A program made the translations under genes and the position numbers. Under the pieces are notes generated by a model that was not told the DNA's origin, did not search any database, and was given only the letters and a program-made list of their open reading frames with translations. Source: Isurus oxyrinchus (taxonomy: Eukaryota). From it: a stretch of 64,000 bases of DNA. Positions 19,301 to 27,393 of the stretch are shown here, one piece after another. The stretch spans positions 62,001-126,000 of the forward strand of contig JANJGN010000385.1 of the NCBI GenBank assembly GCA_026770705.1, given 5' to 3'. Each line of letters begins with the position of its first letter. The first letter of the stretch is position 1.

Positions 19301-22300
19301 TCACCTCTCCTAATATCTCCTAATGTGACTCGGGGTCAGATTTTGTCCGAAGGAGGTGAGAAATGATGGAGGGAATTCCAGAGGTTAGGGTCCAGGCAGC
19401 TGAAGGCACGGCCGCCAATGGTGGAGAGATGGGAATGGGAGAATGTGCAAGGGGTCGGAATTGGAGGAGCACAGAGATTTCGGAGAGCTGTGGGGTGTGG
19501 GGATTATCTGCTGATTGTTCTCTGTCTTTGTTGCAGATCCCCCACAGGAGACGATGGTGTCCATCAGCAGATCCTCAGGTGGGATAAGAGAGGGAAGCAA
19601 TATCACATTAACCTGCTCCAGTGAAAGTGTCCCACCGATATCTCATTACACTTGGTTCAGGATCGAGGGGAACACCAGCACCCAGTTAAATACAAGTAGC
19701 CGCACTCTCTCCTTCACTCCTGTAACACGGGAGAATGATGCAGGTTTCTACTGCACAGCGAGGAACCCAGTGGGTAACAGCACCTCCAACATCACCCACC
19801 TGAACGTACAATGTAAGCATTTTACTCCCCCTGTCTCTGCTTAAAACTCAAACACTTTCTGTCTGAGGGCAGCTTCCTTGCTGTGGTTTAGCATAACTAG
19901 CATCACCTCCCTGCTTTTTTCACCCTGCGCCTCTCCGAGATACATAAGGAGATATCAGAACAGCGACTGAAAGCTCAGAGAAAGAGGCCAGATTTTAAGG
20001 AGTGTCTGAAATGAGGAGAGAGATAGACATGGAGAGGTTTACGGTAGGAATTCTAGAGCTCGGGGCCCAGGCAGCTGAAGGCACGGCCGCCAATGGTGGA
20101 GCGATAGGAATCAGGGGATGGTCAAGAGGCCGGAATTGGAGGAACACAGAGATCTCGGAGGGTTGTAGAGGCTGGAGGAGGTTACAGAGATAGGGAGGGT
20201 TGTGATGGCTGGAGGAGGTTACAGAGATAGGGAGGGTTGTAGGGGCTGGAGGAGGTAACAGAGATAGGGAGGGTTGTAGATGCTGGAGGAGGTAACAGAG
20301 ATAGGGAGGGGTGTAGGGGCTGGAGGAGGTTACAGAGATAGGGAGGGTTGTGGGGTCTGGAGGAGGTTACAGAGATAGGGAGGGTTGAAGGGGCTGGAGG
20401 AGGTTACAGAGATAGGGAGGGTTGTAGATGCTGGAGGAGGTAACAGAGATAGGGAGGGAGTAAGGAGGAATTTGAAACGATGTAAATTTTAAAATTGTGG
20501 CATTGTCGGACCGGGAGCCAGTGTAGCTCAGTGACCAACAGGGAGTGATGTGTGAACGGGACTCGGTGTGAGTTAGGACATGGGGACAGCAGAGTTTGGG
20601 ATGAGCTGATGTTTCCGGAGAGTGGAAGATGGGAGGTCGGGCAGGAGAGTGTTGGGATAGTCGAGTGCGGAGGTAACAAAGGCAGGAATGAGTGTTTCAG
20701 TGTTAAGATTCTATCTTACGCTCTAACTTTGCTATGAAGTTGTCTCATTGTTGTCCTTCCCTCCTCAGATAAGCCGGAGATTTCCCAGCAGTCGGAGTGC
20801 ACTCGGAGGTCAGAGGGGGTCACCTGCGTCTGTGTGGCCAACTCCAACCCACCCGGAGACCTCACCTGGCACCTGCCCAGTGCCAACATCAGCGGTAACC
20901 AAACACACGGAGGTTTTGTGTCGTGGCAGGTCAGAGATGGGCATCTGGTGACTGGTTCCCTCACCCTGATGAGACCCCAGGATGAGGGGGGAGTGATAGC
21001 ATCCTGCTCGGTTCAAAACCCACACGGGGAAGCCATGTTCAAGATGTATCTGTGGGTCAAAGGTGAGAGACTCGCTCAGGATCGATCTCCACTCAGCTGG
21101 ATTGATCCCTAAACTCGAGAATTCCCTCCCTCAACCTCTCCACCTCTCTCTCTACCTCCTCTAAGATGCTCTTTACAACTGACCCCTTTGACCAAGCTTT
21201 GAATCGCCTGACCTCATGTGACAATGGCAACACTTGGTCAAATTGGAGCCAGGCCATTCAGGGGGTGATGTCAGGAAGCACTTCTTCACACAAAGGGGAG
21301 TGGAAATCTGGAACCCTCTCCCCCAGATAAGCTGCTTCATTGGGTGCAAGACAGAAAGCTTTGACAAAATGTCCTTTCTCAGCAATACTCAGGTTCTCCT
21401 CCCAAACGACTAAATATTATACATAAATATTACATAGATTACATCGAGAAACATTTTATATAAATGTTACATAGATTACATTGATAAATATTATATATAA
21501 ATGTTACATAGATTACATTGATAAATATTATATATAAATGTTACATAGATTACGTTGAGAAACGCAACAGCTGATTTGTGCAGAGCAAGATCCCACAAAC
21601 AACAGTGTGAAGATGAGGTGATAAATGATTATTTTAGTGATGTTAGTTGATACATATATATAGAAATTAAAGATATAATTACACATTTAGTGAGGGAAAC
21701 CTGTCCATTTTAACAGGTCTGGGTGTGTATGTGACTCCAGTCTCAAACACCAACATGGTTAACTCACACCTGCCCTCTGAACTGCTCTCCCAGTTTGGGA
21801 CAAACCAGTGGTTCAGGAGGCAGACCCCCCACCACCTTCTCAAGGGAAACTAGGGATGGACAATAAATGTCAGCATTGCCCGAGAATGAGTATTTAAACA
21901 CTGAGTGAGTGTATCGCTTCTCGAGATACATCGGAGCATCATTGTAAACCTGTAGTGCAGTAATTAATGGCTGTTTTTACAGGTAGAGACTCCAGTAAAT
22001 GGACAGTAGGATTGTTCACGACTGGGATCATGTTGAGTGTTTTCCTGGCTGGAATCTTCATCTTCATCTGTGTGAAAAAGTAAGTGTGAAGACTTAACTT
22101 GATTTTAATATAAACATTTGTTTAGGATTAATTGGACAGTTTTTACAAAGGGCCAGCACAGGCACGATGGGCTGAGTGGCTTCCTCCTGAGCTGTGAGAT
22201 TTTAAATTCTTTCATCGAATGTGACTATCACTGGCGTGGCCAATACTAATTGCCCATTCCCTAATTGCCCCTTGAGAATGAGGTGGTGAGCTGCCTTCTT

Positions 22301-27393: not shown

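What the first reader, a model, noticed from the sequence alone, without database searches (positions are those of the whole stretch)
22189..27393. One ectodomain, two swappable signalling tails from a duplicated cytoplasmic module
Seen: the two-exon tail is tandemly duplicated and both copies have intact splice sites and frames. Tail B has LLYTNI (ITIM-like) plus TEYAQI (ITSM consensus TxYxxI). Tail A keeps TEYAQI, but the proximal motif is FLYANP, which breaks the ITIM while keeping YxN (Grb2-type). Differences cluster around this motif. Tail A has its own 3'UTR and AATAAA (24977). In-frame paths are 1a-2a, 1a-2b and 1b-2b. Inference: alternative last-exon choice acts as a signalling switch, loosely like L/S-MAG but built by duplication.
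Basis: partly seen in the sequence, partly recalled or inferred. Interest (0 to 1): 0.78.

Follow-up and report, generated by a model that had tools for sequence, protein, structure and literature searches.

The report
Shark Siglec gene with doubled tail
A shark immune-receptor gene of the Siglec family carries its two-exon inner signalling tail twice in a row, and the first copy most likely works as an optional in-frame insert placed before the standard inhibitory tail, not as a separate gene end.

Summary
The two-exon cytoplasmic module after the TM exon (21983-22079) is tandemly duplicated (unit A 22188-24435, unit B 24988-27408). Both copies have AG/GT sites and open frames. 19 of the 33 exon-2 differences fall in one 50-nt stretch just after the proximal tyrosine (0 of 20000 permutations). 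Tail B reads LLYTNI + TEYAQI. Tail A reads FLYANP + TEYAQI.

The closest annotated relative is Carcharodon carcharias 'myelin-associated glycoprotein-like', isoforms X1-X6, which has the same A-then-B layout. X1, X2 and X6 splice A in series with B through a donor inside exon 2a. X4 and X5 carry B alone. X3 ends just after A. None ends at A's own stop. The same donor is in the window (24404|24405). It makes 1a + 2a' a 315-nt, phase-2 symmetric cassette.

RNA-like contigs show exon1-2a and 1b-2b junctions. Use of the AATAAA at 24977 is not shown.

A-type tails form one lamniform clade (100/99). Their motif half is 30/30 identical to the white-shark copy, so tail A is not a decaying relic.

The scan found the same layout before on two other pieces of this genome (s1-865407, s1-865411). 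I class it as a new variant of a known kind.

The parts
21983..22079 (+). Transmembrane exon (97 nt). It ends in phase 2 (AA|GTAAGT) and its donor feeds exon 1a or exon 1b.
   Evidence: In X1, contigs continue from 22080 into the start of exon 1 (loose ends).
22188..24435 (+). Duplication unit A: intron, exon 1a, intron with the 33-nt minisatellite, exon 2a.
22804..22885 (+). Tail exon 1a (82 nt: 1 nt completing the split codon plus 27 codons). It has 2 differences from 1b, both non-synonymous (V/A, N/K).
23420..24016 (+). 33-nt minisatellite in the exon 1a-2a intron. It is longer than its counterpart in unit B (26818-27049).
   Evidence: family D1
24172..24420 (+). Tail exon 2a with its own stop (TGA 24418-24420). 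It encodes the proximal motif FLYANP and the distal motif TEYAQI.
   Evidence: Contigs in X6 and X18 end exactly at the acceptor 24172, and X1 has an exon1-2a joint.
24172..24404 (+). Exon 2a' (233 nt), defined by the internal donor CAG|GTTCGA at 24404|24405, phase 2. With exon 1a it forms a 315-nt (105-codon) symmetric cassette.
   Evidence: one search shows the site. Searches show that Carcharodon isoforms X1, X2 and X6 read ...TEYAQI-R-RKTA..., and X1 minus X4 is 105 aa.
24316..24375 (+). Divergent patch (codons 49-68 of exon 2) that separates A-type from B-type tails.
24436..24987 (+). Spacer found only after unit A. It holds a CT microsatellite (about 24611-24735), a TE-like stretch (24708-24897, 72% to 47467-47656) and AATAAA at 24977-24982. 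Its use as a 3'UTR is not shown.
24988..27408 (+). Duplication unit B.
25600..25681 (+). Tail exon 1b (82 nt).
   Evidence: X1 has a joint 25681->27145 with GT..AG ends.
26134..26756 (+). Insert present in unit B only, inside the exon 1b-2b intron.
27145..27393 (+). Tail exon 2b. It encodes an ITIM-type LLYTNI and an ITSM-type TEYAQI; stop TGA is at 27391-27393.
27394..28557 (+). Likely 3'UTR of tail B. X1 depth stays at the exon level up to the end of the laid stretch (27950). The first AATAAA signals are at 28470 and 28552.
   Evidence: (table 2). The 3' end itself was not mapped.

Best explanation
The gene is a MAG-like, five-Ig-type Siglec of a lamniform-type shark, with its two-exon cytoplasmic module present twice in tandem.

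The downstream module B is the ancestral, constitutive end of the gene. It carries an ITIM-type plus an ITSM-type tyrosine motif, its stop codon and a long 3'UTR.

The upstream module A belongs to a derived, lamniform-wide tail class. In this class the residue three places after the proximal tyrosine is Pro instead of Ile/Val (YANP), so that tyrosine no longer fits the ITIM pattern. The distal TEYAQI is kept.

A GT donor lies inside the Arg codon that follows TEYAQI. It is in the same phase as the TM-exon donor, so exon 1a plus the first 233 nt of exon 2a form a 315-nt symmetric cassette. Splicing can then do three things:
- skip the cassette (TM-1b-2b, or TM-1a-2b), giving a plain inhibitory tail;
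- include it in series (TM-1a-2a'-1b-2b), giving a long tail with four tyrosine motifs;
- more rarely, end just after A.

Shown here: the anatomy, the phases, the splice sites, the isoform set annotated in the white-shark relative, junction contigs for exon1-2a and 1b-2b, and conservation of the A motif half.

Inferred: the serial junction 24404->25600 in this species, the relative abundance of the forms, and any difference in signalling.
For: 1. Anatomy and phases.

2. The closest relative is Carcharodon carcharias 'myelin-associated glycoprotein-like'. Its Ig4 exon peptide differs from the window's at 1 residue by my reading. Its A module groups with the window's at 99/97.

3. That relative has six annotated isoforms. 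X1 (801 aa), X2 (794) and X6 (671) read TM-1a-2a'-R-1b-2b. X4 (696) is 1b-2b. X5 (696) is 1a-2b. X3 (697) is 1a-2a' followed by six out-of-frame residues. The 105-aa difference between X1 and X4 equals the 315-nt cassette.

4. Serial tails are also annotated in four other lamniform models: P0037 and P0035 (A+B), P0016 and P0001 (A+A).

5. Contigs:
- X1 has a joint 25681->27145 with GT..AG ends (1 contig).
- X1 has a joint from the end of exon 1 to 24173 (depth 470).
- X1 has TM-to-exon-1 loose ends.
- X18 has a 2574-nt contig whose laid part, 24279-24172, stops exactly at the 2a acceptor.
- X6 record 28 starts at 24170 with 17 letters lying elsewhere.

6. X1 depth is 34964 in the 2a bin, 6179 in 24360-24559 and 975 in 24760-24959. 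This fits an exon ending near 24404. It is weak evidence because it is contig depth.

7. Constraint on A: the window's A differs from Carcharodon's A at 10/48 residues in the N-terminal part and 0/30 in the motif part (Fisher p=0.0058).

8. All 11 A-type modules form one clade (100/99) nested among lamniform B-types. The two non-lamniform modules in the tree are B-type. The other non-lamniform hits read by eye are also B-type.
Against: - The serial junction 24404->25600 was not among the 15 of 1098 joints that displayed, so it is not shown for this species.
- The Carcharodon isoforms are XP_ model records, and I could not see their RNA support.
- All four runs are Logan contigs laid at 90% or more likeness. 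The scan reports at least two other tandem-tail Siglec loci in this genome, so some junction contigs may come from paralogues. 2a-laid contigs differ from the window at 4-8% of letters.
- The X1 exon1-2a joint was laid from 1b, not 1a, so the exon 1 copy cannot be assigned.
- In X18 the bin 24360-24559 (4874) is not lower than the 2a bin (2334). That goes against a clean exon end at 24404.
- The internal donor CAG|GTTCGA is a weak match to the consensus, in my judgement.
- Exon 2a keeps an open frame to a stop at the homologous position, and A-type tails do end genes in paralogues (P0005, P0020, P0021, P0044, P0050). An A-terminated form is therefore not excluded.
Confidence: 0.6

Rival explanations
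1. One reading: true alternative last exons. Transcripts end either at tail A (own stop 24418-24420, own 3'UTR, AATAAA 24977) or at tail B. This would give two mutually exclusive signalling tails on one ectodomain.
For: - Exon 2a is open to a stop at the position homologous to B's stop.
- AATAAA lies 557 nt downstream of that stop.
- A-type tails with their own stop end several paralogous gene models: P0005/P0013, P0020, P0021, P0044, P0050.
- In X18, depth just past the stop (bin 24360-24559: 4874) is not lower than in the 2a bin (2334). X4 has a contig at 24490-24607.
Against: - None of the 6 isoforms annotated for the Carcharodon relative ends at 2a's own stop.
- X1 depth drops from 34964 in the 2a bin to 6179, then 19, then 975.
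- The spacer is a microsatellite plus a TE-like stretch, and the AATAAA abuts the start of unit B.
- No 3'-end evidence is available, because contigs cannot show RNA ends.
Confidence: 0.2
2. Tail A is a functionless by-product of a local duplication. It is spliced in as noise or not at all, and only tail B matters.
For: - In the window and in the white-shark relative the proximal ITIM residues are lost at both -2 (F) and +3 (P).
- dN exceeds dS outside the patch: 13.8 non-synonymous against 1.2 synonymous differences in codons 1-48 and 69-82. Relaxed constraint could contribute to this.
Against: - The motif half of A is 30/30 identical between the window and Carcharodon, while the N-terminal half differs at 10/48 (p=0.0058).
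- Splice sites and frame are intact in the window, and the A module reads open and in frame in the Carcharodon models.
- The 11 A-type modules keep Y-x-[NS]-P in 11/11 and TEYAQI in 10/11.
- Exon 2a is present in spliced contigs.
Confidence: 0.12
3. Assembly artefact: two haplotypes or paralogous copies of one tail wrongly placed in tandem.
For: - The 5' part of the units is 96-99% identical over long stretches.
- The window holds other near-identical local duplicates next to N runs, e.g. the Ig3 exon copy at 16207-16475.
Against: - Contigs from two independent runs bridge 24987|24988 with 47 or more letters on each side: X1 record 4 (24879-25034) and X6 record 30 (24909-25075).
- The white-shark models carry A and B in one reading frame in the same order.
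- A and B belong to different old clades.
- The patch has dS 0.50, far beyond allelic divergence.

Caveat: the bridging contigs differ from the window at 5-10% of letters and could come from sister loci.
Confidence: 0.03

Closest known systems
Carcharodon carcharias 'myelin-associated glycoprotein-like' isoforms X1-X6 (XP_041037215 to XP_041037221; RefSeq models)
   Same: It has the same domain order: V, C2, three Ig, TM, then A module, then B module. The A motif half is identical (30/30). It carries the same FLYANP/TEYAQI followed by an ITIM-type/TEY.QI pair.
   Different: It is a different species or copy. The N-terminal half of 2a differs at 10/48 residues and the TM exon peptide at 6/32 by my reading. 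The models have one V-set domain, while the window has two V-set exons. These are computed models, not cloned cDNAs.
Mammalian MAG (Siglec-4), L-MAG / S-MAG
   Same: It is a Siglec with five Ig domains whose cytoplasmic tail is changed by alternative splicing. The window's Ig5 exon has MAG domain 5 as by far its best solved-structure match (E 4e-11 against 4e-6 for the next). Exon 12 skipping or inclusion in Mag: PMC3683929 (search listing and start of abstract only).
   Different: In MAG a short stop-bearing exon is included or skipped. There is no duplicated module, no serial doubling, and mammalian MAG lacks ITIMs (PMC7226832, passages). The V-set exon here scores better against Siglec-5/7/CD33/8 than against MAG.
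CD33-related Siglec tails (ITIM plus membrane-distal ITIM-like/ITSM motif)
   Same: Tail B has a membrane-proximal [ILV]xYxx[ILV] and a distal TxYxx[IV], 22 residues apart. This is the layout recalled for CD33-type Siglecs. The ITIM signature is as given in PMC7226832.
   Different: Bony fish are said to lack CD33-related Siglecs (PMC7226832; sharks are not mentioned there). Orthology to the mammalian CD33 cluster was not tested. Tail A does not fit the ITIM pattern.
CEACAM1-L / CEACAM1-S
   Same: It is an Ig-superfamily receptor in which inclusion or exclusion of a cytoplasmic exon decides whether the ITIM-bearing tail is made (PMC2490704, start of abstract).
   Different: There the exon changes the reading frame and gives long versus short tails. 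Here a symmetric in-frame cassette adds a second, diverged signalling module.
Teleost MAG with ITIM
   Same: It is a fish MAG-lineage Siglec that keeps an ITIM and is expressed in blood cells (PMC7226832, abstract and passages).
   Different: That paper describes no tandem tail module and has no occurrence of 'splice'.

Membership tests
Siglec (I-type lectin) family | N-terminal V-set Ig domain related to Siglec V-sets | tested here: met
   Pfam V-set (E 4e-12) and Ig_CD22 (4e-9) for exon 10163-10633. The best solved-structure matches are Siglec-5, -7, CD33, -8, sialoadhesin and MAG (E 5e-14 to 8e-12).
Siglec (I-type lectin) family | Conserved Arg on strand F that binds the sialic-acid carboxylate (feature recalled) | tested here: inconclusive
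   V2 reads ...YIFRIEF..., with Arg at the place where V1 (6590-7078) reads ...YFFTIKF.... The position was judged by eye against the Siglec pattern, not by a structural alignment.
Siglec (I-type lectin) family | C2-set Ig domains following the V-set | tested here: met
   C2-set_2 for 11315-11671. Ig_3/I-set/Ig_2 for 17388-17660 and 19515-19841. Weak Ig_3/C2-set_2 for 20738-21109, below the curated cut-offs.
MAG / Siglec-4 orthologue | Five Ig domains with a MAG-type membrane-proximal domain | tested here: inconclusive
   The Ig5 exon's best PDB match is MAG residues 396-481, E 4e-11. V and C2 also match MAG, but no better than CD33-type Siglecs. The window has extra V and Ig3 exon copies. No gene tree was made.
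MAG / Siglec-4 orthologue | Conserved synteny next to hepcidin (recalled for mammals) | not tested
I did not re-examine it. The many paralogues in Carcharodon and Cetorhinus show a lineage expansion, not a 1:1 orthologue.
Inhibitory ITIM/ITSM receptor tail | [I/V/L/S]xYxx[I/V/L] ITIM | tested here: met
   Tail B has LLYTNI. Tail A has FLYANP and does not fit at -2 or at +3. The signature follows PMC7226832, with Ile at +3 accepted from recall.
Inhibitory ITIM/ITSM receptor tail | TxYxx[V/I] ITSM-type motif (definition recalled) | tested here: met
   TEYAQI is present in both tails.
Inhibitory ITIM/ITSM receptor tail | Phosphotyrosine-dependent recruitment of SHP-1/SHP-2 | not testable with these tools
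   Needs phosphopeptide binding or cell assays.
   AATAAA is at 24977. Contigs cannot show RNA ends, and depth beyond the stop is low in X1 but not in X18. None of the 6 Carcharodon isoforms ends at 2a's own stop.
Symmetric cassette-exon pair | Same intron phase on both sides and a length divisible by three | tested here: met
   The TM donor and the internal 2a donor are both phase 2, and 82 + 233 = 315 nt. Carcharodon X1 minus X4 is 105 aa.
Symmetric cassette-exon pair | Both the included and the skipped forms seen in RNA of this species | tested here: inconclusive
   Exon1-2a and 1b-2b joints were seen. The 24404->25600 joint was not among the joints displayed. The exon 1 copy in the TM-exon 1 contigs cannot be assigned.

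The most novel reading that the evidence does not exclude
Lamniform sharks evolved a new Siglec signalling module, the A-type. The ITIM's +3 Ile became Pro, giving Y-x-N-P. That fits the recalled Grb2-type pYxN and Crk/Nck/Abl-type pYxxP preferences instead of SHP-type binding. A GT inside the Arg codon after TEYAQI makes every tail module a ready-made phase-2 cassette. Tandem copies can therefore be stacked or skipped by splicing. One ectodomain could then be tuned between a purely inhibitory output and a mixed adaptor-plus-inhibitory output. The module has spread through many paralogous Siglec genes.
Probability: 0.3. Interest if true: 0.6.

Novelty: new variant of a known kind. Interest (0 to 1): 0.45.

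Why it matters
Changing the cytoplasmic tail of an inhibitory Ig-superfamily receptor by splicing is well known (MAG, CEACAM1). What differs here is the route. A whole two-exon signalling module was duplicated in tandem. One copy diverged sharply at the residues that decide which SH2 proteins bind. A donor site inside the coding sequence lets the copies be used singly or in series without breaking the frame.

If the forms are truly regulated, this shows how immune receptors gain new signalling outputs by exon-module duplication, in a lineage that split early from other jawed vertebrates. It would also show that sharks have a large, fast-evolving Siglec cluster with its own tail class.

In three searches, judged from titles and abstract starts, I found no paper on shark Siglec tails. 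The isoforms do already exist as computed RefSeq models for the white shark, and the scan has met the same layout at two other loci of this genome. The finding is therefore a useful annotation and a testable hypothesis, not a surprise.

Tried and rejected
1. Compensated frameshift as the origin of the A patch. A gapped alignment gains only 3 matches for 2 gaps, and 388 of 2000 controls do as well. Not supported.

2. Positive selection from dN/dS. Inside the patch both dS (0.50) and dN (0.35) are high, which points to a separate old history and not to amino-acid selection alone. Outside it there are 13.8 non-synonymous against 1.2 synonymous differences, too few for a firm test.

3. A word search with exon 2a alone found nothing: 1 candidate, none scored. 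This is as expected from the length limits of that tool.

4. A third tail copy, or a tail for the inverted partial paralogue on the minus strand (V 58393-57915, C2 57187-56831, part of Ig3 56515-56357), was sought by blastn and tblastn. None was found in the window.

5. Homology between A's spacer and B's 3'UTR. There is only a 16-nt match around the AATAAA signals (24971-24986 against 28546-28561, E 0.04). I treated it as chance.

6. The 78% match of 27422-27586 to 53706-53544 is isolated. I no longer read it as a paralogue's 3'UTR.

8. The window's exons were never joined into a spliced model, in tools or in scripts. Each exon was translated and searched on its own, and phases were worked out from coordinates. 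Full-length comparisons used database proteins only.

9. No supplementary files were opened. None bears on a claim made here.
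Full report
WHAT IS THERE

The + strand of the window carries a multi-exon Siglec-type gene. Stop-to-stop ORFs and Pfam give these exons:
- two V-set exons, 6590-7078 and 10163-10633 (V-set and Ig_CD22 families);
- a C2-set exon, 11315-11671;
- three further Ig exons, 17388-17660, 19515-19841 and 20738-about 21050;
- a transmembrane exon, 21983-22079.

The second V-set exon finds Siglec-5, -7, CD33, -8, sialoadhesin and MAG as its best solved-structure relatives (E 5e-14 to 8e-12). 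The last Ig exon finds MAG domain 5 far ahead of anything else (E 4e-11 against 4e-6).

The relatives found later are all shark proteins. The nearest come from the lamniform sharks Carcharodon carcharias and Cetorhinus maximus.

THE OBSERVATION

Behind the TM exon the two-exon cytoplasmic module occurs twice:
- Exon 1a 22804-22885 and exon 2a 24172-24420.
- Exon 1b 25600-25681 and exon 2b 27145-27393.

Each exon was translated on its own and the phases fit. The TM exon ends with two bases of a codon. Each exon 1 supplies the third base plus 27 codons. Each exon 2 starts in phase 0 and runs 82 codons to TGA. Acceptors and donors are intact in all four exons.

The repeat units are 22188-23332 = 24988-26133 (93.6% overall, 96-99% over long stretches) and 23360-24435 = 26757-27408. 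Unit B has a 623-nt insert of its own (26134-26756). Unit A has a longer 33-nt minisatellite in the intron. Similarity ends about 15 nt after the stop codons.

Between the units lies a 552-nt spacer (24436-24987). It consists of a CT microsatellite and a TE-like stretch, and ends with AATAAA at 24977. The tail exons have no third copy in the window.

Tail A reads FLYANP ... TEYAQI. Tail B reads LLYTNI ... TEYAQI.

Of 33 differences in the 249 nt of exon 2, 19 lie in one 50-nt window directly after the proximal tyrosine. 0 of 20000 permutations reach this.

IS IT AN ARTEFACT?

Three results say no.
1. Short contigs of two independent runs bridge the unit junction 24987|24988: X1 record 4 (24879-25034) and X6 record 30 (24909-25075). 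They differ from the window at 8 of 156 and 16 of 167 letters, so they could come from sister loci.
2. Gene models of another species contain an A-type and a B-type module in the same order within one reading frame.
3. In a tree of 23 tail modules the 11 A-type modules form one clade (support 100/99). The window's A groups with the white-shark A (99/97). The two non-lamniform modules in the tree (Stegostoma, Hemiscyllium) are B-type. The Scyliorhinus and Mustelus hits read by eye are B-type too.

A and B are therefore old, separate tail classes and not alleles.

Inside the patch (codons 49-68) both dS (0.50) and dN (0.35) are high. In the rest of exon 2, pS is about 0.03. The 5' part of the units thus looks homogenised. 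In the N-terminal part, the window's A and B differ at 7/48 residues, fewer than the window's A against the white-shark A at 10/48. The patch has kept its own history.

A compensated frameshift as the origin of the patch is not supported.

WHAT THE RELATIVES SHOW

A profile-free HMMER search with exon 2b alone found 12 proteins at E 0.001 or better, 11 of them shark Siglec-like models. A word search seeded with the tail region of one of these database proteins found 23.

The closest is Carcharodon 'myelin-associated glycoprotein-like'. Its six isoforms are in the collection:
- X1 (801 aa), X2 (794) and X6 (671) read TM - 1a - 2a up to ...TEYAQI - R - 1b - 2b. The two modules are in series.
- X4 (696 aa) is TM-1b-2b.
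- X5 (696 aa) is TM-1a-2b.
- X3 (697 aa) runs through 2a to TEYAQI and then six residues that fit exon 2b read out of frame.
- None ends with the residues that follow TEYAQI in an A-type terminal exon.

The serial form needs a donor inside exon 2a. In the window it is present as ATCAG|GTTCGA at 24404|24405. It is phase 2, like the TM donor. Its AG plus the first G of exon 1b makes the Arg seen in the models.

Exon 1a (82 nt) plus exon 2a' (233 nt) is 315 nt, or 105 codons. That is exactly the X1-X4 length difference.

Four other lamniform models also have serial tails: P0037 and P0035 (A+B), P0016 and P0001 (A+A). A-type modules also end genes on their own: P0005/P0013, P0020, P0021, P0044, P0050.

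These are computed XP_ records, and I could not see their RNA support.

RNA EVIDENCE

Only Logan contigs were on offer. I laid X1 (organism A) and X4, X6 and X18 (organism B) on 21960-27950 at 90% likeness.

X1 behaves like RNA. Depth is 8769-39504 in the bins holding the four tail exons, against 432-1210 in the non-repeat intron bins.

X1 shows the following:
- a joint 25681->27145 with GT..AG ends (1b-2b, one contig);
- a joint from the end of exon 1 to 24173 (exon 1 to 2a). It was laid from 1b, which I read as copy ambiguity because 1a and 1b differ at 2 of 82 nt;
- contigs running from the TM exon into the start of exon 1.

In X18 a 2574-nt contig is laid on 24279-24172 and stops exactly at the 2a acceptor. 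In X6 a contig starts at 24170 with 17 letters lying elsewhere. Exon 2a is therefore in spliced RNA.

The serial joint 24404->25600 was not among the 15 of 1098 joints displayed, so it is not shown here.

X1 depth past the internal donor falls (34964, then 6179, 19, 975). This fits an exon end near 24404. In X18 the corresponding bin does not fall (2334, then 4874). Contig depth is a poor measure, so I leave use of A's own stop and the AATAAA open.

IS TAIL A USED OR DECAYING?

Between the window and the white shark, the A module differs at 10 of 48 residues in its N-terminal part and at 0 of 30 in the part that carries both tyrosine motifs (Fisher p=0.0058). For B the figures are 6/48 and 3/34.

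Across the 11 A-type modules, Y-x-[NS]-P is kept in 11 and TEYAQI in 10. That is the pattern of a constrained signalling segment.

HOW IT MOST LIKELY WORKS

B is the ancestral terminal module, with an ITIM-type and an ITSM-type motif 22 residues apart. A is an optional, symmetric, in-frame cassette. Skipping it gives a standard inhibitory tail. Including it puts a YANP/TEYAQI pair in front of the inhibitory pair.

The change from Ile/Val to Pro at +3 removes the ITIM fit. From recalled SH2 preferences, it creates a pYxN / pYxxP type site. That, and any effect on signalling, is inference.

I put it at about 0.2.

COMPARISON WITH WHAT IS KNOWN

Tail switching by splicing is known:
- Mag exon 12: PMC3683929 (search listing and start of abstract only).
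- CEACAM1 exon 7: PMC2490704 (start of abstract).

Fish MAG keeps an ITIM, and bony fish are said to lack CD33-related Siglecs (PMC7226832, abstract and passages). That paper does not mention sharks.

Searches for 'siglec' with 'shark', with 'cartilaginous fish' and 'ITIM', and with 'elasmobranch' listed no paper on shark Siglec tails, judged by titles and abstract starts.

The scan itself reported the same tandem-tail layout at two other loci of this genome, with the same reading from the annotated relative (s1-865407, s1-865411).

VERDICT

The feature is real. It is a new variant of a known kind and of moderate interest.

Noticed in passing
window 6590-7078 and 10163-10633: Two V-set exons, 85% identical, lie in tandem on the + strand. 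The first reads ...YFFTIKF... where the second reads ...YIFRIEF..., so only the second keeps the Arg at the place expected for sialic-acid binding. Some white-shark models have one V-set (P0038), others two (P0037). This is the subject of other notes of the scan (s1-869632, s1-869648).
   Followed up: partly
window 16207-16475, next to the N run 16476-16603: A second copy of the Ig3 exon, 98% identical to 17403-17671, runs into an N run. It is either a real exon duplication (relatives have 2-5 such domains in series, e.g. P0003, P0017) or an assembly effect.
   Followed up: no
window 58393-56357, minus strand: An inverted partial paralogue: a V-set exon (82-85% to the + strand copies), a C2 exon (97.5%) and the 3' half of an Ig3 exon (97%). 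No Ig4, Ig5, TM or tail exons were found for it in the window.
   Followed up: partly
window 27422-27586 and 53706-53544 (minus strand): An isolated 165-nt stretch of tail B's 3'UTR is 78% identical to a minus-strand stretch near the partial paralogue. It may be a shared repeat or a relic of that paralogue's 3' end.
   Followed up: partly
window 23420-24016, 26818-27049; also about 180-500, 36050-36800, 38610-38990, 48310-48580, 52640-53220, 59380-59915: The same 33-nt minisatellite family recurs throughout the window on both strands. It sits in the exon1-exon2 intron of both tail units and attracts huge contig depth in all four runs.
   Followed up: no
window 22070-22079 (end of the TM exon): The X1 contig laid before exon 1b carries an A-to-G difference in the last bases of the TM exon. 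That would turn the window's ...VKK into ...VRK, as in the white-shark and basking-shark proteins. The white-shark relative also has Glu where the window's TM segment has Gly (LLAEIF against FLAGIF).
   Followed up: no
Hepcidin next to MAG and CD22 is the arrangement I recall for mammals, which would tie this shark cluster to the MAG/CD22 region.
   Followed up: no
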